Below, piece after piece: positions 1,765 to 39,777 of a stretch of DNA of 64,000 nt. Numbering within the stretch: position 1 is the first letter of the stretch; each line of letters starts with the position of its first letter. Location of the stretch: contig NC_058130.1 of NCBI RefSeq assembly GCF_016433145.1, forward strand, positions 777,971,002 to 778,035,001, in the 5' to 3' direction. The notes under the pieces were generated by a model. The model had not been told where the DNA came from and ran no database searches. It saw only the letters and a program-made list of their open reading frames with translations. The position numbers were made by a program, and so were the translations under genes. Source of the DNA: Gracilinanus agilis (lineage: Eukaryota).

Positions 1765-3004
1765 TTTCTAGTGTTTTTCATAGGAATGAGTGTTGAATTT
1801 TGTCAGAAACTTTTTCTACATCTATTAATTTAATCATATTGTTTTTGTTACTCTTGTTATCCATATAATTGATTATATTGATAATTTTCCTTTTATTGAA
1901 CCAGCCCTGCATTCCTGGTATAAATCCTGTTTGGTCACAATATATATAATTTTTGTGACATATTGTAGTCTGCTAGGTAGTATTTTATTTAGGATTTGTG
2001 CATCCATATTCATTAATGAAATTGGTATATAAATTTCTCTGCTTTTACTCTTCTAGGTTTAGGTATCAGTATCATATTTGTTTCATAAAAGGAGTTTGGT
2101 AGGAATTTTCTTCTTTATTATTTAAGATAATTTATTTAGTAAATTGGAATTAGTTGATCTTTATTGAATTCAATTATAAATCCAATTGTAAAGCCCTGAC
2201 ATTTTTTTTAGAAGTTCATTTAATGGATTGTTCAACATTTCTTCCTGAAATAGATTTATCTGGATATTCTATTTGCTTCTCTGATAGTCTAGGCACTTTA
2301 TACTTTTTTGGTTTTCTTCCATTTCACTTACATTGTTAAAATATTTTGCCATATAATTGGGCAATGTAACTCCCAATAATTGCTTTGATTTATCTTCATT
2401 GGTGGCATATTTACCTTTCCATTTCTAATGCTAGTGCTTTTGTTTTCTTCTCTTTTCTAATCACATTAACCATTACTTTAATTTTTTTCATCAAACCAAC
2501 TATTAGTTTTGTTTATTCAATGGTTTTATTACATTTTATTTTTATTCATCTTGCCTTTAACTTTTAGATTTTCCTAATTTGATATTTAATTGTGGATTTT
2601 AAATTTCTTTTTTTCTATTTTTTTTAATTGCACATATGATCTTAAGAGGTATTTTAGGCCCACGAATAAAAATGCATACCTAGCAAAACAAGGAACCCTT
2701 CTAGGAGGATATAGCTATAATTTCATGTTATACAGCTCAATGTTTCATATCTTGTAAAATAAATAAATACCTTATCTTATTTCTTGTTGTCAAAGGATAG
2801 AATTGTTGAACGTTAGAGAGTAGAAAATGACCTTTGAATATATAGCACAGAATGTTTGTGCTGGGTGGGACTTTTACAATATAAAACATAGAATCTTGGA
2901 GCTGGAATAGACTTTGTAGAATAGAACATTGAAATCATCTAGTTCAAGCTTTTCCCTAAAAGGGAAAATGGTTTGTCCAAGGTTTCGTGTGAGTTAGTGG
3001 GAGA

Positions 3005-3112
3005 ATCAATTAAATCAAGAGACATTTATTGAATGCCTCTTATGTGCCAACTACTCTACTAAGCAGTGAAGATTCAAAGAAAGGCAGAAGAGAGCCTCTG
3101 CTATCAGAGAAC
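3005..3112 (-). mobile_element. L2 3' terminal tail
   Basis: The segment acatttattgaatgcctcttatgtgccaactact...gcctctgctatcagagaact is the reverse complement of the L2 3' end. Confidence 0.8.
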
Positions 3113-3360
3113 TTTTTTTTCCAGTCCTAGCTGACTTTGCTGAGGCCAGCCTTGCTTCTGCCCAAGCTCTGGGCCCTGTTGCCCAGGCTCTGGGCTCTTC
3201 AGCCTTGGGTCCCAGGTCTCACTGCCAAGGCCTTGCACTGCCCTCAGGGTTAAGTCTGTGGTGCCCTCAGCCAGCCTCTGAGAATTTAGAGACTGCCGGA
3301 CCCTCGCTCCAACTCTAGCGTGGTAGGTGGTGTAGAGGAGGGGTGATCAGCTTGTGGTAG
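3113..3360 (-). pseudogene. YBX3-like: Decayed YBX3 exon-1-like fragment joined to an L2 tail
   Basis: One minus-strand frame reads ...WDPRLKSPEPG...LGLEKKVL, compared with YBX3 QDPAPKSPVG...EDAEKKVL. ggaaaaaaaagttctc resembles YBX3 ggagaaaaaagttctc. accacaagctgatcac resembles unit 3 of the 17.3-18.7 kb array (accacaaccttgatcac). Confidence 0.6.
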
Positions 3361-3584
3361 TTTTACTCCCTTATAACATGGAAATCCCCAAACACTGCCT
3401 ACCTTTAAAGTTGTGCCCCACAGGAGAGCCCCTTTACTCATCTGATTTTGATTTTTGTCATTTTGAGATGTTTTGTAGTGATTGGTTGTGAGAAGTGTCC
3501 AAAAGTTCCTGCTACTCCATGGCCATCTTACCTCCACCCCATTGAAGTCCTTTTTAAGGAAAAGTAAAGTAGTGAGATATAGCC

Positions 3585-16289: not shown

Positions 16290-16700
16290 GAGTTCACAGA
16301 CCCCAGATGAAGAAGCCCTTGACTAGAGGGAAAAATATGATCACATATAGGGATATACAATATCTATATCAAATAAGAATCCACTGATTGGAGAGAACTC
16401 TAACACCTGGCAGTGTTAAGAAAGGCCCTCTGAAGAAGCCAACACTTGAAATGAGCACTGAAGAGGAGGTAGAAGTTCAAAGAGGAAGAGTATTCTAGAA
16501 GAGGTGCCTGTCCAAAGGCACCAAGGTGGGAGAGGTTTTATAAAGAGAAAAGTTTTGAGTCTCTCAGGAGAGAGCACTGGGTTACTTTCATGCATGGATG
16601 AGGAATGGTTCAACAAATAGGAGGAAGAGAATGTCAAAGCAGTGTGTCAAGAAGACTCGGGGAGAACAGAGTAAAAAGGAGGGAAGGTTGGTTAGTAGAA
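16290..16700 (-). mobile_element. L2 relic
   Basis: Purine-rich reverse L2 (gaaggccctctgaagaag, gagtattctagaagagg). Confidence 0.6.
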
Positions 16701-17187
16701 AATTGGAAAAAGCTGAGCAGAAAGAACTCTTATCAATTCAAGCATATCTTCCCACATTTATCTAATTTCCTTGTCTATTAGACTTTTTTCTATAATATAG
16801 TAGTATTCTGTTTGTTCCATTTTATTGACATTTGTTCAGTCATTTATTTCCTAGTAGATTTCGTGGGTTTTTTGCTTCACAAAAGTGCTGCTGTGGATAC
16901 TTAGGAAAATATGAGACCTTTCCCCCTGTTAAGGTTACTGAGATTTGCACATAGCAAGAGAATCTCCCAAGATAATATCCAAAAGTTTCAATTGTTCAGT
17001 ATCCTAGGAAAAGATAGGGCTTTTACAGACCATAACCTTGAATCATTTAGGAAGACATATATCTGTTTTAGATGCTTTGAAAACATCTAGACTATATGAT
17101 TTAATTAATTTGTGTACTTACACCTATCGGCACATTTTATTTGAAATATTTTCATTCTACCAGGTTCTTTGCTGAAGTTCCTGCCAT

Positions 17188-17338
17188 GAATGAATGAATA
17201 AAGAAATGAATGAATAAAAAAGCATCGATTAATCAATGATTATTCCCAAGGCACTTTGCTCAGTGCTAGGGATTCTAATAAAATAGCCCATGCTCACAAG
17301 GAGCTCGTGTTCTAATTGGGGAGAAGACAATACCTATG
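17188..17338 (-). mobile_element. L2 3' terminal tail
   Basis: tgaatgaatgaataaa...gctcagtgctagggattc...gctcacaaggagctcgtgttctaattggggagaagac. Confidence 0.85.
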
Positions 17339-18680
17339 GAAAGCTTCAGCTCCAAGTCAGAGGGAAAGGTCCCACAGGCCTTTTGGAGCAGCAGCAAAAG
17401 AGATGACATGCCTCTTCTAAAACATCATTTTCACTGATAAAATCATAGTGTCTGTGTTGAACTATTTGACAGGGCCAAGTCTTAGTAAAAAACCTTCCAT
17501 CCTAGATCTTCAGTAGCGATGGCCACAGCCCTGCAGGGCCACGTCCAGGCTGCATCTCCCCAGAAGTGATTTCCCAGGATGGTGGTTGAAGACACTGGGC
17601 AAGAAATATGACTATTTCAAAGTCTCTTGAGTTCTGTGTTCTGAGCTATCTCCATCAGAACCTAAGGGGGCATGGTGGTGGTTAAAATGATGGTAATTTG
17701 ACCTGCTTAGCTCTTGCTGCTTCCTGCATCTTCCTGACTGCTTCAGCTAGGCTGCCTTGCTTCTCTGTGTGTGGCAGTTGGTTGGTAGTCTGTGGGGATG
17801 ACTTGTCCCTTCTCCCAGGGATTGATTGCTTCCTTTGACAATGGCTGTAGAGGCAGAACTGGAAGGTACTGTCACTGCCAAGTTTCCATCATCTACCTTC
17901 TTGCTGATGGCAATGGCAAGGAAGGTGAACCCTTCAGGACCAGGGTGGAAAGCAGATCTAGTGGTTTTGGGGGACACTGCCACTCTCAAGGCTCTGAGGT
18001 TCAGGGTCCTGATTTATTACTTTTCAGAGTCTAAGGAGAGATGGTGGTCAGAGTGGTGGTGGTCTAACCTGCCTGGAACCTTCTCTCTCCCTCAAAGGGG
18101 TGCTTCAGTTGCTTGTCTGCTCTGTAAGTGGCAGTTGGTTGGCAGTTGGTAGGGATGACCAGGCCCTTCTCCACAGGAGTTGCTTTCATGGATGATGGCT
18201 CTGAAGACTAGGACGAAAGCAAGTTTTTTTAATTCGAGAGGTATGGATGTTCCCAAAGATCTTGGGTTCAAGGTCCTGAGCTCTCTTTACTGGAGTCTGC
18301 GGGGGCATAGTGATCAAGGTTGTGGTGGTGGGGTTGATTTGCTTGGCACATGCTATCTCCTTCATCTTCCTTCAGTGGCCTCCTTCAGCTGGGCTTGTTT
18401 ACCTTCTGATGGGGGTGGCAGTTGACAGTTGGTGGGAATAGCTGGCCTCATCTCTACAAGGATCATTTCCTTAGATGATGGCTGTGGGGGCTAGGCTGGA
18501 TATGAAGTTGGTGATCTGGGAATTGCTCCCATTTCCAGGACTTAATTATCTGTATGGTGATGGTTAAGGGAATGGGTTCCTTCTATAACTTTTCTTAATG
18601 ATGGCTGCAAGGCTTGGACTAGGAGCAGAAAGCTCTAGTGCTCTCATCCTAAAACCTCTGGTTTGATTCCACTCAGTGTT
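17339..18680 (-). pseudogene. YBX3-like: YBX3-derived relic: 3-4 tandem decayed copies of the exon-1 N-terminal coding region followed by a broken cold-shock domain
   Basis: Minus strand 17496-17403 reads KVF/TK/LGPVK*FNTD/YDFISENDVLEE versus YBX3 [31 protein letters not shown]. cttggccctgtcaaatagttcaac compares with the recalled YBX3 cttggcactgtcaaatggttcaac. Upstream reads GDAA...ATED..KV, and the repeat units read TTT..P.....QDPEPQSLESGSVPQ. Confidence 0.85.
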
Positions 18681-19134
18681 TCTTGAGTATCCATTTTGGG
18701 CAAATTCTATGCTAAGTAGGCCAAGAGGGAGATGCAAAGATAATTAAAGACAGGCTCAGCAGGCAGGGAACATGCACAGACGCATACTTATATTCTAGTT
18801 GGAGAGATAATGTAGATGTGGCTCAGCCATAGACAGATTGAAGGACTGAGAGTCAGGGGCCCTGGATTCTGTCATGAATTGGCTCTGGGTCCTTGGGCAA
18901 GTCCCTCTCCCTTGGCCTCATTTACCTCCTCTGTCAAATGAGATAGGCCAGATGCATCTATTGATGCAGCAAAGGAAGCTTAAAAGAACCACTGTCTCTC
19001 TCCACTTTGGGCATCAAAGATTGAGGGCAACGCCAGTCTGAGACTAAGGGTGTTCAACCGAATTGGGCTCAGAGCCAGACTCAGTGATGAAATAAAATCG
19101 CCTCACCTGTTTATAGTGTTCCACTCATCAAACA

Positions 19135-19290
19135 TTTTTCCTATTTTTTCAAATCCTTGCCTTCCATCTTAGAGTCAATACTAAGTATTGGTTCCAAGGC
19201 AGAAGAATGGTAAGAGCTAGGCAGCTGGGGTTATTATTTGCCCAGGTGGACTTCCCTGACTCTAGGCCTGGTTAACCACATAGCTGTCCC
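19135..19290 (-). mobile_element. Internally deleted CORE-SINE
   Basis: ccttccatcttagagtcaatactaagtattggttccaaggcagaag...ctctaggcctgg. Confidence 0.8.
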
Positions 19291-19299
19291 CATTTTTCT

Positions 19300-20960
19300 T
19301 AAAAAAATTTTATTTGATGCTTTTTGGTGGGCTTTTTTCCACTTTTTTAGCTCATAGTTCCTACTGCCATCCAGAAAAACCTCTTTTTAGAAGTCTTAAA
19401 AAATAACAAATGAAATTTGCCATAATTAACCAACTTAGCAGTATAAGCAGTATTCCACATTCATAATCCACCTTTCAGTGAAGAGTGCATTTTCTAAGGT
19501 TTTTCTAGGGTCAACTTTTGTCACTATAATTCCTAGGACCTTTATTAAAGCCCTTTCTTTTTGCAGTGTTGTGAAGTCATTACCCAGAATGTTTTTCTGG
19601 ATCTGTTTATTCTGTACCAGTTCATATTCATCTTCCCAAGTTTCTCTCAATTCTTCTTATTTGTAATTTCTTGTAGCATAATATTCCATCATATTCATGT
19701 TGTTTCCACTTCTTTAGTTATCTTCCAGAGTGAGTCCGTTGAAACTTTTAAAATGTCAACTTTGTACCAGGCACTATGTTAAGCATAGGCATAGATCCCT
19801 GCCCTCAAGGAGTTTCCAGTTTAATGGGAGAGAAGTTGAAAAATGGGGATAGAAGGAAAAAAGGAAGGGACCCAGAGGCCCAGATGAAGTCCTATAGCCA
19901 GGGAAGAGTGATGAAGTGGTTACTTTGGGAGCCCTCCTAAAACAGAGAATGTAAGAAATGCTAAAACAAGTGTTAGAGGCCTTTGGGTTCATCCTGCTCA
20001 AAAAAGGAGGGAACTGAAATCCTGAGGGAAAGGGATTTGCCTAGTGTCACATACTAAGCAACAGGAACACCATTTGAACCCAGATTCCATGAATCTTTCT
20101 GTTGTACTGCTCTGCCTCATCAGGCATCTACTTGGTTTCCAGTTCTTCACTACCACAAAAGCACTGTTACAAATGTTTTGTACAGATGAGATCTTTACTT
20201 TTGTCTGACCTTCTCAGCTACTAGGATCTTAGGGTCAAAATTTATAAGGGCCTTTTAGTCACTTTTAAAACAATTCCATATTGTTTCCCTAAATGGTTAA
20301 TGCCAGTTTATGACTCTACCAACCAATTATATTCATGTGGCTGTTTTTCCACAGCCCTTTAAGAATTAATTATTTCTATCTTTGGTCATCTTTACCACTT
20401 TGCTAAATATTAGGTGAAACCTTACAGATGTTTAATTTTAAATTCCTCTTTATTAATGATTTTGAGTAGTCTATCATATAATTGTTGATAGTTTGTAATT
20501 CTTTTGAGAATTGTTTGTTCACGTCTCTAATCACTTATTAATCTTGGAATGACTATTTTTGTTAGTTTCTTATATTTCTTGGGTATGAAACCCCACTCAG
20601 AAATCATTTGATAGGTTTTTCCCCCATTGACTGATTTCACTTTTCATGAGCTGCATTGAATTTGTTTATGCCCAAGCTTTGCCTTTATTATATCTCCTGT
20701 GATCATCTTTATAACTTATCTGGTTAAGAATTCTGCCCCTAGGAAAAATCAAGGAAAATGCTTTCTTCTATTTACTCCTTTTTATGGTGTGACCTTTTAT
20801 ATTAAAGTAGAGCATCCATTTGGAATTTATAGTGATACAGGATGTAAAATACTGCTGTAAATATATTTTTGCCAAATTATTTTCCAGTTCTCTCAGTAGT
20901 TTTTGTCACATAGGACATTCTTCCCCAAGTAGTATTTTGAGGTTTATTTAACCCTTGTTA
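19300..20960 (-). mobile_element. Old L1-derived mosaic, interrupted by an L2 tail and a MIR at about 19760-20110
   Basis: Reverse L1 3' motifs (ccagttcttcactaccacaaaa, gctaaatattaggtgaaacc, ttgtcacataggacattcttcccc). Confidence 0.65.
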
Positions 20961-32259: not shown

Positions 32260-33660
32260 ATCAGTCAATAAACATTTATTAAGCACCTAATATATGTGGC
32301 AAGTGCTGAGACTACAAAGAAAGGCAAAAGACACTTCCTTCTATCAAGGAGCTCACAATCTAATGGGAGAGACAGCAAGCAAACAAATATGTACAAATCA
32401 GCTCTATAGAGTCTAAATAGAAAATAAGCTGTACATGGAAGCCACTAGAATTAAGAGGAGTGGGGAAAGGCAAAACATGGAATTTGAGCCAAGGCTTGAA
32501 GGAAGTCAGAGAAGCCAAGAGGCAAAGATGAGGAAGGAAGTCATTTTGGGCAGGGGGATTGTTAGAGCGAATGTCAAGAGGTAAGGCAGTACAAAAGTGA
32601 ACTGGTTTACAAGTGGTCAAGATAGAAAAGAGAAAGTGGTGGGGATGATTTGGGAAAGAACTGAGAGCTGAAGGGATTAGAGCTCACAGTTGAAAGGACA
32701 AAAAACAGAGGTGGAACAAAAGCAGATTGTGGTCAAGTAAGGGCATCTCAGAGTTGTTGAACTTGGCAGTAGAGCATTTCTGGGAAATAATCATTCCTTT
32801 AGTTGATTGAGGCAGGATGGTGGGAGGAGTAAGTCATGAGAAGTGAGTAAATAGAGCAACTAGGAGTGTAAGGTTTTGGGGGGAGTATCAATATATATGT
32901 TGAAGATCACTGGTATGAGGATAGCAAATACCAACCAGCATAAAAGTCCCCACCCTAAGATAGCATGTACAGAATTCTAAGGCAAAGTAACAAGAAAGTA
33001 AATGGTGGGGAGAGGAAAGGCAGGTAGAGATCTGTGAAACAGGAATGTATTCCAGGTCCAGATATGGAAAGTGAAATGCCAGGTGTGAAGAATAAGAAGA
33101 CATTTTAGCTAGACTGGACAATCCAGGAAGAGGAGATATGTATAGTAATGTTGGAAAGGGAGGCTATGAAAGGCTTTAAAAGCTCAATAAAGAGGCTTCT
33201 GTTTGATCCTTAAGGCACTGAGCAGCCATTGGAGTTTGAGTAGAGGAATAATATGGTCAGCCCTGAGCTTTAGGGGAATCATTTGTACAGTTTGGTGGAG
33301 GCAGCATCAAAGAGAGGAAAGCCTAGAGGAGGTGAGAAGGCCAAGGGAGAGATGATCTGTGTTTGAACTCAGATGGTGGTCTTGTTCAAGGAGAGCGAGG
33401 AGATAGATGTGAAAGAAGGAATGGAAGTAAAATCAACAAGAGAGGACTAACAAATGTGGGTAACTCCCTAAGGGGTGGGGGTGGGGTTGATTCAATGATG
33501 AACATGTTAAGATGCTTGTAGGCCTTCCAGTTTGAAATATCTAGTAGATAGTTGAAAATGCAGCTTGGAGCTCAGGAGAAAGATTAGACCTGAATCTCTT
33601 CACTAGGGAGTCATCTGGGGTGATAGTTAAACCCATGGAAATTGATGTGATTAAGTGAAA
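32260..33660 (-). mobile_element. L2 relic
   Basis: Starts with the reverse 3' tail aaacatttattaagcacc...ctatcaaggagctcacaatctaatggg and continues as purine-rich reverse ORF2. Confidence 0.85.
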
Positions 33661-36240: not shown

Positions 36241-37193
36241 CCCATGATAATCTCTTTTACATCATTTTCCTATATAATTCTTTCTCTGTAACATTCTACA
36301 TCCTGTTCTCTCCCATTCTGAGCCTCCCCCCACCCCAATTCTCCATTAACCTGGTATTACCTCTAGCTTTGTTGTATAGAGAGTGCAGTCAAAATATGTT
36401 CTTCTCTCACTAGACCTTTAATCAGAGAACCTAAAGGAGTGCAAGATGACCAAACTAAGACAGTGCTATTTATTGTATTATCAGCCTCAGGCACTGTACA
36501 TTCATCATCTTGCCCCCAGGAAACTGTAGTATGACTAGTTTGAATGTGCAGCAGAATTAAAAATCTAAAGGACGTTGGGGATCTCAGAGTTGAACTAGCA
36601 GGGACACTTTGTCCAACCTTTACCTGAGAGAGGCAGCAGAAATTAATGGAAAGCCTAGTCTTGAATGCATAGCTTTGCAACTTAAAGAAAATCTTTTAAC
36701 TTCTCTAGGCCATGGTTGTTTCATCTTTAAAATACGGATAATAATGTTTACACTACATTAGCTGGATAGGGGATACCCTCAGAGCCCTCTATAATAATGT
36801 GAGCTGCAAGATTATTGCTTTTACACAAGGGAATTGCTCAAAGGGGTAGAATCTTAGCATGTCTTTCTTGACACAATAAGATCTTCCTGCTCCCAGATCT
36901 TATCATGCCATTCCCCTACTCGGTAAACTTCACTGGCTCCCTATCACCCCAGGATCTTCATTTCCTGGCCCCCTCCTGTAAATCTTGTTACATCTTATTG
37001 GGCAGCCACCACCACCACCACCACTATTCATATTCTCCCTTTCCAAACTCTGTAATCTAGGGACACTGGACTTCTTGTCAGGCAGTCAGTATTTATGAAG
37101 TGCCTTCTTTGTGCTGGACACCATGCTGAGTGCTAGGGATACCAGAAAAGCTTTCAAAAAACCCTAGTCAAATGGGGGAAAATAAATGCAAGC

Positions 37194-37235: not shown

Positions 37236-39777
37236 AAGCTTGAGAGGATGAAAAAGCAGTCATAGTCATATTGCATGAACATGCGATGGGGCATCATGTG
37301 TTCATCTTTTTGTGAATCACAGTGTGATTGATACTTTTTCATTAAACACTGTCCTTCTGGAAGGGATAGGACAAATACTTGGGGCTACACTGGACTTCCA
37401 GCCATGTTGGCTCAGTGCCAACTGGGCATGGGTAAGTCTTTGTTATTCATGCCATCACCAGGGCCCCTCTGACTCCAAGTGATCAGATTCCACTTGTTCA
37501 AATAGACAATCTGATTGGCCCAACCGACCCTTCTTGCCTTTGAGTGATTGGAATTACATTCACTTTTAGTCCAGTTTCCTATAGGGAGATTCTATCTCCC
37601 TGCTCATTCTTTTTCAGGGTTATTGGTGTGTATCAAAGAAACTTAAGTAATTCAACAAACTTTTATTGAGTACCTTAAAATAAGAATAAGATCTCCTTTC
37701 CAATCCAGACTCCAATCAATCAATTAATAAACATTTATTAAATACTGGTGGTATGCCAGACACTATGCTGATTATGGCCATATAAAGACAGTCAAAAATG
37801 ATGCATGTCCACAAGGAGCTTCTGTTCTAACAGAAGAGACCACATGTAAATAAAGGGGGACATACAATTTACATATGGAATGGCTGGAAGGTAACCTTCC
37901 TGGGAAAGGTTCTAATATCTGTAAGGATCAAGCAAAGCCTCCTGCCTACTGGTGTGAGCAAGTTGCTATAAGCAAACCAGTAAAACAATATCATGAGCTG
38001 GAATATGGAGAGTGAGGAAGAATAAGAGTCCTTGAAAGGTGAAAAGCTTTAAATGCCAAACAAGAGATTAAATGTCATTGTGGAAATAATGGAGAGTCTT
38101 TCACATTTGTTGATGAGGGGAGATTCCTAGTTCAGACTTCTGGACAGCTGCCAAAGTGATAGTCCTAGAGGATAAGTGGGACCACAAGATGCCCCCCGCC
38201 CAACCCCATCAGACAAACTCCACTGACTCTTTATTACCTCCAGGACCAAATGCAGATGACTCTGTTAGACACTTTACATAGCCTGGTTCTATCTTCTTTT
38301 CCCGAGTTTATTAAACATTGCTCCTCTTCATGAACTCTCTACTTAAGTAAAGTGTATATCCCCAGGGTAAGCTAGTGTAATACCAGGCACATAATAAGAG
38401 CTTAATAAATATTTGATTGATTGAATCCCCATAGGAAACAGTCCCCATTGCATCTCTGACCTTTATATAAAATGTCCTCCATAGACACTCTCTTCCTCAC
38501 TTCTGCCTCTTTGAATTCTGAACAGCCTTCAAGGCACAGCTCAAGTCTATCTTTCCCTCAAGCCCTGTCCTGATGTCCAGTTCTAGCTGCTAATGCCTCC
38601 TCCCAAAAGATGCCTTAGATATGTTCTCTATGTATTTTGTAAATACATACATGTATGCATACTGCCGCCTCTAATGTAGTAGTATAAGCCCTATGAAGGT
38701 AAAGATTGTTTTATTTTTGTCTATGCCCCCAGAGTCTGACAGTGGTAGTCATTTAATAAATGATTGGTAGTTGATTAATTTCCATGAATGAAATTGTGCT
38801 GAGTACTGAGTTGACAAGGGCAAACAAAATAAAATTCTACCATAATGTGTGTGCCCTTAAGTGTTTATAGCCTTGAGGCAGAGAGTGTGAGCAGCCCAGA
38901 GAAATGATGTAATGTGTGCCAAGATTGTAGAGCTAGTTGTCAAGACTGCCCCTGGTTATGCCTTGGACCAGGGTGCAGACAGGGGTCCATACCCACCATG
39001 ACACCATTCTCCCCCTGAAGATACAGAAGTAAAAATCTCATAGGAAGGTGAGGGGGAAAAAGAGGGAACCCTTGAGGTTACCAAACCCAACCTGAGACCG
39101 AGAGGGTCACACCAGTCAGTGGTAGAACTGGCATTCCAGCCCCAGGCCTCGGCCTCTCATCCAATGCACTTTTTGATGTCCTGTGTTCCACCACATGGGC
39201 TCTGCCCTGGCAGAGGTTTTGAGAATGGCAAACAAGCACACAAGCAATTGTGAAATAATAGAGAACCAAAGAACCAGTGCACAAAAACTATTCAAAGTCT
39301 AAGAATGAAAAGTCAATTCTCCCTGGGGATATTAGGCAAGTTTCATGGAAGAGGAAGCATTTGAACTGAGTCTAGAAGGATTTTAGCCTATGGAAATATT
39401 TGAGGAAAGGCAATGCAGGCATGAGATGCAATAGGAAGAAAAGCACAGAGACTCCACAGTAATGTGTAGGCTCTTACATAGGAGACAAAGTAGTACAGGT
39501 GGCTGGAGGATGATGAGAGAAAGGCAAGAAGAAGCCAGAGGGTGGAGGGCTTGTTGGATAGAGTCAGTTGGAAGAGAGTGGGGCTTAATCATTCTGGCTT
39601 CCAAGTTCTTGAAGTTGCACAGCCAAGAGGCATCCTGCAGATGAGACTCAAAGGCAGGTCCTCAGTGGAATATTCCCTGTACTATTCTTGGGGGCCTTGA
39701 GCAAGGCTCCATATGCCCCCACACCAGGAGTGGGAAAAGCTTTTTCGGAAATTCTGCCATTAGCAATAGGGCGGGGC

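What the first reader, a model, noticed from the sequence alone, without database searches (positions are those of the whole stretch)
17188..18680. YBX3 cold-shock-domain head fused to an L2 3' tail: candidate chimeric retroposon family
Seen in sequence: on the minus strand, a segment reading GDAA...ATED..KVF/TK/LGPVK*FNTD/YDFISENDVLEE (about 17560-17403) is followed, after about 60 nt, by the last ~150 nt of L2 in the same orientation. Established knowledge, recalled: YBX3 reads GGDAA...[38 protein letters not shown], and the DNA cttggccctgtcaaatagttcaac differs at two positions from the YBX3 sequence as I recall it. L2-clade LINEs mobilise RNAs that carry their 3' tail, as with MIR. Inference: a host mRNA 5' fragment acquired an L2 tail and was amplified as a SINE-like element with a protein-coding head. 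An ordinary processed pseudogene would keep the 3' end and poly(A) rather than only the 5' end. A second relic with the same layout lies 14 kb away, which favours a dispersed family over a single event.
Basis: partly seen in the sequence, partly recalled or inferred. Interest (0 to 1): 0.9.

Follow-up and report, generated by a model that had tools for sequence, protein, structure and literature searches.

The report
Y-box-headed, L2-tailed retroposon relic
This is a dead copy of an old, dispersed marsupial repeat whose front comes from the 5' coding part of a Y-box (cold-shock-domain) host gene and whose back is the 3' end of an L2 LINE; a protein-coding head on a LINE-dependent repeat is unusual, but here it is a decayed relic.

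Summary
The core observation holds. On the minus strand, 17412-17496 is a decayed start of a Y-box cold-shock domain (one stop, several frameshifts). It is followed in the same orientation by an L2 3' end that finishes in a (TCAT)n microsatellite at 17186-17215.

It belongs to a repeat family. Contigs of three organisms laid at 80% likeness or more pile up on 17244-18501, about 40-48 contigs on the core 17411-17449. Where their alignments break, their consensus reads TVKWFNIRNG, better preserved than the window. In frame with the window's YDFISENDVLEE, this matches only Y-box proteins in PDB (E 1.7e-6). Downstream, their consensus follows the window into the L2 part, so the junction is shared.

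Corrections:
- The '60-nt spacer' is itself L2 3'UTR, so the join lies at about 17398-17411.
- The 'second relic' at 3005-3360 shows no similarity to this element and no cold-shock trace.
- The YBX3 (rather than YBX1) origin rests on recalled sequence only.
- Novelty could not be checked, because Dfam and Repbase were not available.

First readers of this scan noted the same layout at four other loci of this genome (unchecked notes).

Best reading: an L2-mobilised, non-autonomous chimeric retroposon family, with an extra tandem multiplication of the head in this copy.

The parts
17186..17215 (-). Terminal 4-nt microsatellite, (TCAT)n on the minus strand. This is the 3' end of the element.
   Evidence: Tandem Repeats Finder: period 4, 7.5 copies. 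It follows the L2-type tail directly.
17216..17397 (-).
   Evidence: nhmmer matches to other L2/MIR-type tails in the window and their alignment. The family's spacer consensus aligns collinearly with an independent L2 copy at 37690-38000(-), score 15.5 against shuffles 9.0 +/- 1.4.
17398..17411 (-). Junction between the Y-box-derived head and the L2-derived tail.
   Evidence: A contig of another copy bridges 17394-17447, and about 10 contigs cover 17398-17410. At 17408, 21 contigs break with a loose-end consensus homologous to the window's own continuation.
17412..17496 (-). Relic of the start of a Y-box cold-shock domain (KV..TK.LG.VK*FN..Y.FI..ND..E). TGG has become TAG at 17462-17464, about 4 nt are missing near 17449-17452, and there are further frameshifts near 17478-17490.
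   Evidence: The family consensus is from the loose ends.
17497..17600 (-). Part of the head just upstream of the cold-shock start (reads GN..GDAA...ATED). It resembles the Ala/Pro-rich N-terminal domain of YBX3 as I recall it.
   Evidence: Translation. The loose-end consensus below 17545 in 8 contigs translates to PATAPAGALAI. The YBX3 likeness is recalled, not tested.
17602..17863 (-). Head repeat unit U3.
   Evidence: Self-BLAST: 64% identity to U1 and U2. Alignment A2. Repeated in the genome.
17864..17983 (-). Extra ~120-nt segment between U2 and U3. It partly repeats the start of a unit.
   Evidence: In contigs of other copies this segment lies directly upstream of a unit start (joints 18497 to 17966 and 17987).
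17984..18212 (-). Head repeat unit U2. Its first part (18111-18206) is the piece best matched by other genomic copies.
   Evidence: Summed depth 1421 against 28 for single copy at 18132-18205. Self-BLAST.
18237..18500 (-). Head repeat unit U1, the 5'-most part that is demonstrably repeated in the genome.
   Evidence: Self-BLAST. Depth returns to single copy above 18502.

Best explanation
The stretch 17186-18500 (minus strand) is one decayed copy of an old, dispersed, non-autonomous retroposon family of marsupials.

Structure:
- The 5' head derives from the 5' coding part of a Y-box-protein mRNA. It runs from the N-terminal domain into about the first 28 codons of the cold-shock domain. The parent is most likely YBX3.
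- The 3' part is the last ~200-250 nt of an L2 LINE, ending in a (TCAT)n microsatellite.

Likely history (inferred):
1. A single chimeric RNA or cDNA arose. The most likely route is that L2 reverse transcriptase started on an L2 3' end and switched template onto a Y-box mRNA within the cold-shock-coding region, then copied it toward its 5' end.
2. Because the chimera carried the L2 3' end that L2-clade enzymes recognise, one or a few transcribed master copies were then copied in trans by L2. This gave tens to hundreds of copies sharing the same junction.

In this copy the head is multiplied in tandem: three ~260-350-nt units about 64% alike, plus the last unit that runs into the cold-shock start. 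The copy is non-coding and inert. It was already present before organisms A and B split.
For: Shown:
- The head is Y-box cold-shock sequence.
- It is multi-copy. About 40-48 contigs at 80% or more lie on 17411-17449 and about 50 on 18132-18205 in the source-like run, with similar pile-ups in two other organisms. 86-98% of laid contigs run on into unlike sequence.
- Other copies keep TVKWFNIRNG in frame with YDFISENDVLEE (13-18 contigs per run).
- The junction is shared. At 17408, 21 contigs have a loose-end consensus homologous to the window's continuation, one contig bridges 17394-17447, and contigs on 17320-17382 carry the same junction-proximal letters upstream.
- The continuation is L2 3'UTR and ends in a microsatellite.
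- There is no tRNA-like head, no Rfam family, and no rest of the cold-shock domain in the window.
- The orthologous contig of organism B (2863 nt, about 92-94% alike) carries the whole element.

Leads only:
- First readers noted the same layout at four other loci of this genome.

Established knowledge:
- L2-clade LINEs mobilise RNAs that carry their 3' end (MIR). MIR, MdoRep1 and THER1_MD are named as LINE2-mobilised in marsupials (PMC2910653).
- SINE 3' parts come from partner LINEs and their 5' parts mostly from small RNA genes (PMC7245038).
Against: - No full second copy could be read. Only 30-letter loose-end consensuses and short aligned pieces were available, so it is not shown that other copies end at the same L2 terminus or have unrelated flanks on both sides.
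- No target-site duplication was established. A 7-nt AACTTCA occurs near both ends, but that is within chance.
- A Pol II mRNA head has no obvious internal promoter, so repeated amplification needs a master copy in a favourable place.
- The family consensus of the second half (YDFISENDVLEE against [11 protein letters not shown] in YB-1) is already well diverged from Y-box proteins. The source may therefore have been a decayed or paralogous copy.
- The YBX3 assignment and the reading of the tandem units as N-terminal coding sequence rest on recalled sequence.
Confidence: 0.7

Rival explanations
1. The head is the 5' end of an autonomous L2 lineage that once captured a Y-box 5' exon as its 5'UTR or ORF1 start. 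The copies seen are internal-deletion derivatives (5' end plus 3' end) of that L2, not a separately formed chimera.
For: Tandemly repeated head units recall the promoter monomers of some LINE 5'UTRs (established knowledge for mouse L1). Head and L2 tail are collinear and share one junction.
Against: About half of the contigs covering the core break with the same L2 3'UTR-like continuation (21 contigs), so the short form is the amplified one. No RT or other LINE open reading frame adjoins the head here. No cold-shock-domain ORF1 is on record in the LINE literature searched.
Confidence: 0.12
2. The chimera is a passenger inside a larger, unrecognised repeat (an LTR element or DNA transposon), or was spread by DNA-level duplication, rather than being mobilised through its L2 tail.
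For: Only short pieces of other copies could be seen, and the element's outer boundaries in them are unknown. The ~64%-alike tandem units show DNA-level or RT-level rearrangement.
Against: Depth falls to single copy just outside 17216-18501, so nothing larger is repeated around this copy. The 3' boundary coincides with an L2-type terminal microsatellite. Other notes place copies in introns of different genes on other pieces of the genome (unchecked).
Confidence: 0.1
3. A lone fragment of a Y-box processed pseudogene lies next to an unrelated L2 fragment by chance.
For: L2 and MIR tails are common in this window. This copy's own cold-shock score is only marginal.
Against: Tens of other contigs share the core and the same downstream continuation. 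No further Y-box sequence lies beyond the L2 tail or anywhere else in the window.
Confidence: 0.03
4. The resemblance to Y-box proteins is accidental, and the family is an ordinary anonymous L2-related repeat.
For: One reversed-sequence control reached 51 against the observed 57 in the frameshift-tolerant search. Pfam found nothing for the stitched peptide.
Against: The in-frame family consensus of 22 residues hits the eight Y-box entries of PDB at E about 2e-6, and all others at 0.015 or worse. Pfam CSD is its best family (E 0.003).
Confidence: 0.03

Closest known systems
L2-mobilised SINEs of mammals and marsupials (MIR/THER1, THER1_MD, MdoRep1)
   Same: Non-autonomous and dispersed. The 3' end is taken from L2 and ends in a short tandem repeat instead of poly(A). 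They are presumed to be copied in trans by L2 (PMC2910653).
   Different: Their heads are tRNA-derived plus a CORE region, transcribed by Pol III. Here the head is protein-coding mRNA sequence, no tRNA-like part is present, and copy number looks like tens to hundreds rather than 10^5. Whether the family is filed in Repbase/Dfam under some such name could not be checked.
Bipartite chimeric retrocopies made by LINE reverse-transcriptase template switching (U6-L1, mRNA-L1 chimeras)
   Same: A 5' part copied from a cellular RNA is joined to a 3' part copied from a LINE, in the same orientation, with the join inside the cellular RNA (reviewed in PMC4476161 and PMC5470649).
   Different: Those are L1 products with poly(A), and each is a single event. 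Here the partner is L2, and the chimera itself became a multi-copy family with one shared junction.
Processed pseudogenes of Y-box genes (YBX1/YBX3)
   Same: Derived from host Y-box mRNA. Non-functional, with stops and frameshifts.
   Different: Processed pseudogenes keep the mRNA 3' end and poly(A) and are typically 5'-truncated. This element keeps only the 5' part and ends in L2 sequence, and no further cold-shock sequence is present.
SINEs with unusual heads (5S, 28S, snRNA or 7SL-derived) and composite retroposons such as SVA
   Same: Modular build: a foreign head joined to the tail that the partner LINE recognises (PMC7245038).
   Different: Those heads come from small or ribosomal RNAs. 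A head from a protein-coding region is not among the usual sources.

Membership tests
Vertebrate Y-box protein cold-shock domain (sequence origin of the head) | N-terminal cold-shock signature ..[15 protein letters not shown].. with Y-box-specific flanks | tested here: met
   Family consensus TVKWFNIRNGYDFISENDVLEE: E 1.7e-6 to YB-1/YBX2, 0.015 or worse to bacterial cold-shock proteins and Lin28. Pfam CSD E 0.003, below the gathering score because only 19 of 66 positions are present.
YBX3 specifically (rather than YBX1 or YBX2) | Match to the YBX3-specific N-terminal domain upstream of the cold-shock domain | not testable with these tools
   No tool-given YBX3 sequence could be obtained. The likeness of 17497-17600 and of the tandem units to YBX3 codons 1-95 is from recalled sequence only. 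A text search for two recalled YBX3 peptides found nothing.
L2-dependent non-autonomous retroposon | 3' end homologous to the L2 3'UTR, in the same orientation, ending in a short tandem repeat | tested here: met
L2-dependent non-autonomous retroposon | Many dispersed copies sharing the head-tail junction | tested here: met
   about 40-48 contigs on the core, 21 with the same downstream continuation, one bridging contig. Whole copies were not seen.
L2-dependent non-autonomous retroposon | No reverse transcriptase of its own | tested here: met
   Only short ORFs of 108 aa or less in 17150-18700, none LINE-like.
L2-dependent non-autonomous retroposon | Insertion signature (flanking target-site duplication, empty orthologous site) | tested here: inconclusive
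   Only a 7-nt AACTTCA near both ends, within chance. The organism B ortholog already holds the element.
SINE in the strict sense (MIR/CORE-SINE) | Pol III head derived from tRNA, 5S or 7SL | tested here: not met
   ARAGORN finds no tRNA-like sequence in 16500-19500. Rfam gives no relevant hit.
L1-type processed pseudogene | mRNA 3' end plus poly(A) tail | tested here: not met
   The sequence ends in an L2 tail and (TCAT)n. No downstream cold-shock or C-terminal Y-box sequence is present.

The most novel reading that the evidence does not exclude
A stringent (tail-recognising) LINE, L2, gave rise to a retroposon family whose head is host protein-coding mRNA. The CpG-island-derived 5' coding segment of YBX3, a germline-expressed Y-box gene, multiplied in tandem, would serve as its internal Pol II promoter, in the way monomers serve mouse L1. 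That would be a route for retrocopying host coding sequence in L2-dominated genomes, and a case of a host gene's 5' end recruited as a retroposon promoter.
Probability: 0.2. Interest if true: 0.7.

Novelty: new variant of a known kind. Interest (0 to 1): 0.5.

Why it matters
Non-autonomous partners of LINEs almost always carry heads from small RNA genes. A family headed by part of a protein-coding mRNA and tailed by L2 would show that template-switch chimeras, known as one-off events for L1, can themselves become amplifying elements when the LINE recognises its own 3' end.

It would also explain scattered Y-box cold-shock 'pseudo-exons' in marsupial genomes, which could otherwise be mis-annotated as YBX pseudogenes or exons. 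The copy in this window is inert.

The weight of the finding depends on whether Dfam/Repbase already lists the family, which I could not check.

Tried and rejected
- Word-indexed protein search with the stop-free piece 17349-17501(-): no candidate. Other copies could therefore not be fetched through proteins.
- Exact 22-mer of the family core in metagenome contigs: three hits, all chance matches with unrelated flanks.
- Pfam on the stitched 30-mer: nothing.
- The scan's own index by sequence: blank.
- Literature searches for a Y-box or YBX3-headed repeat, for cold-shock domains in LINE ORF1, and for L2 chimeras in marsupials: nothing relevant.
- The opossum transposable-element paper of 2007 is not held in the library.
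- Text search for recalled YBX3 peptides: none.
- Second relic at 3005-3360: rejected. From recalled knowledge, 3100-3560(-) looks like an L1 5'UTR start followed by an L2/MIR tail.
- MdoRep1 as the identity of this family: considered unlikely. At about 120,000 copies (PMC3403934), two or three fragments per window would be expected, and nhmmer finds no second head in 64 kb.
- An interrupted processed pseudogene: rejected, because no remainder of the domain is in the window (that query was recalled, not tool-given).
- Both read-laying runs are used, so no further walking along other copies was possible.

Full report
**What is in the sequence**

Read on the minus strand, the region has three parts:
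- an internally repetitive stretch at 18500-17600;
- a short stretch at 17600-17412 whose three frames give GDAAWTWPCRAVAIATEDLGWKVF / TK / LGPVK*FNTD / YDFISENDVLEE;
- a sequence of L2/MIR-tail type that ends in a 4-nt microsatellite at 17186-17215.

**Is the cold-shock likeness more than chance?**

For this copy alone it is only marginal.
- The stitched peptide hits Y-box proteins and nothing else in PDB, but at E 0.002 and after hand-picking frames.
- Pfam sees nothing.
- A frameshift-tolerant alignment of the YB-1 30-mer printed scores 57 at 17415(-).
  - The next best place in the window scores 40.
  - Twenty block shuffles gave 38-50, and a reversed control gave 51.

The decisive evidence came from laying public contigs on the stretch (four runs, 80% likeness; the source-like run alone).
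- Single-copy depth is 28.
- The summed depth reaches 1150-1380 on 17411-17449 and 1421 on 18132-18205.
- Depth is raised over all of 17244-18501 and falls back to single copy outside.
- Where the alignments of 13-18 contigs per run break at 17447, their consensus on the minus strand translates to T(V/I)KWFNIRN(G), in frame with the window's YDFISENDVLEE.
- That 22-mer needs no stitching. It scores E 1.7e-6 against the eight YB-1/YBX2 entries, and 0.015 or worse against bacterial cold-shock proteins and Lin28. Pfam CSD is its best family.

So the head is a real Y-box cold-shock-domain start. The window copy is a damaged member: TGG has become TAG at 17462-17464, about 4 nt are lost near 17450, and there are further frameshifts upstream.

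**The tail and the junction**

- 17187-17345 matches other L2/MIR-type tails in the same window: 37714-37843 at E 4e-5, plus 37113-37181 and 32331-32376. The shared consensus is the one known for the L2 3' end (established knowledge).
- The '60-nt spacer' is L2 as well.
  - The family consensus of that stretch was assembled from the loose ends.
  - It aligns collinearly, upstream of the tail match, with the independent L2 copy at 37690-38000(-).
  - The score is 15.5, against 9.0 +/- 1.4 (maximum 14) for shuffles.
- The join therefore lies at about 17398-17411, right after the ..NDVLEE codons.
- The junction is shared by other copies:
  - 21 contigs break at 17408 with a consensus homologous to the window's own continuation;
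  - one contig bridges 17394-17447;
  - about 10 contigs cover 17398-17410;
  - contigs lying on 17320-17382 carry the same junction-proximal letters upstream.

**What it is not**

- There is no tRNA-like head and no Rfam family, so it is not a MIR or CORE-SINE.
- There is no poly(A), and no remainder of the cold-shock domain anywhere in the window. One search tested this; its query was recalled, so it serves only as a negative check. The element is therefore not an interrupted processed pseudogene.
- It has no LINE-like open reading frame of its own.

**The 'second relic'**

- 3005-3360(-) has no significant similarity to the focal element (best E 0.42).
- It gives no signal in either cold-shock search.
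- nhmmer with the head finds only itself in the window.
- From recalled knowledge, 3100-3560(-) looks like the start of an L1 5'UTR followed by an L2/MIR tail.

The conclusion it was meant to support, a dispersed family, is upheld by the contig data instead.

First readers of this scan noted the same head-plus-L2-tail layout at four other loci on other pieces of this genome (s1-153783, s1-173141, s1-153849, s1-153895). Those notes are unchecked and serve as leads only.

**The tandem head**

- Self-comparison shows three units, 18500-18237, 18212-17984 and 17863-17602. They are about 64% alike, with offsets of 283, 354 and 637.
- An extra ~120-nt piece lies between the second and third units.
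- In the alignment, the stretch 17600-17405 behaves as a fourth unit that runs on into the cold-shock start.
- Against human YBX3 as I recall it, each unit looks like codons 1 to about 95: the start codon, the threonine run, the LPQAP.. and ..PQDPAPKSPVG parts, and the ..AGNPGGDAAP.. part. Most differences are of the CpG-decay type. This agrees with note s1-176214 but is not tested with tool-given sequence.
- Other copies match the first part of unit 2 best (about 50 contigs), and the equivalent parts of the other units much less (7-9 contigs).
- The simplest reading is that typical copies carry fewer units. The multiplication would then have happened at or soon after this copy's origin, given the 36% divergence between units.

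**Age and spread**

- A 2863-nt contig of organism B is collinear with the whole locus at about 92-94% identity, with some local replacements. The insertion therefore predates the split of organisms A and B.
- The family is also seen in organism C.
- Copies match only in 50-80-nt pieces at 80% or more, so the family is old.
- From the contig counts, and from six noted loci in about 40 Mb of scanned windows, the copy number is probably tens to a few hundred. This is a rough estimate.

**Mechanism**

Shown:
- the bipartite structure;
- the shared junction;
- multiple copies in three organisms;
- an L2-type terminus.

Inferred:
- A chimeric cDNA formed when L2 reverse transcriptase, primed on an L2 3' end, switched onto a Y-box mRNA. 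This is the template-switch model known for L1 chimeras (PMC4476161, PMC5470649).
- The chimera was then amplified in trans by L2 because it carries the recognised 3' end, as MIR and other LINE2-mobilised marsupial SINEs do (PMC2910653).

From recalled exon structure of YBX genes, the head crosses an exon junction and the join lies inside a small exon. That would favour a spliced-mRNA origin and template switching. It is unverified.

**Comparison with what is known, and novelty**

- The element works like an L2-dependent SINE, but its head is protein-coding mRNA rather than a small RNA (PMC7245038 gives the usual rule).
- It is built like an L1 template-switch chimera, but the partner is L2 and the chimera became a family.
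- I found no paper describing it.
- Dfam and Repbase could not be searched, so the family may already be catalogued under an anonymous name.
- MdoRep1 seems unlikely on abundance grounds (PMC3403934).

**Verdict**

I rate it a new variant of a known kind, of moderate interest, pending a Dfam check.

Noticed in passing
window 3100-3560 (minus strand): Sequence starting ggggtggaggtaagatggcc..., which from recalled knowledge looks like the 5' start of an L1 5'UTR. It is followed at 2995-3100 by an L2/MIR-type tail.
   Followed up: partly
window 37690-38000, 37113-37181, 32331-32376 (minus strand): Independent L2/MIR-type 3' ends. The one at 37690-38000 extends far enough upstream to show that the focal 'spacer' is L2 3'UTR.
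   Followed up: partly
window 16874-16947 and 18872-18945: Two short stretches flanking the element that are also repeated in the genome (summed contig depth 127 and 333 against 28 for single copy). Their identity is not determined.
   Followed up: no
window 17499-17573, 18287-18379, 18614-18665: In the orthologous contig of organism B these stretches are replaced (75 nt by 43 other letters; 93 nt by 92 other letters) or absent (52 nt). These are local rearrangements since the species split.
   Followed up: no
window 18506-18640 (minus strand): A possible further, very decayed partial head unit (..cttgcagccatcattaagaaaag.. resembles unit starts). It is single copy by contig laying, so the true 5' end of the element is uncertain.
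   Followed up: no
window 18443-18591 (plus strand): Weak Rfam U3 snoRNA match (18 bits, E 0.52, gathering score 34). It is almost certainly noise.
   Followed up: no
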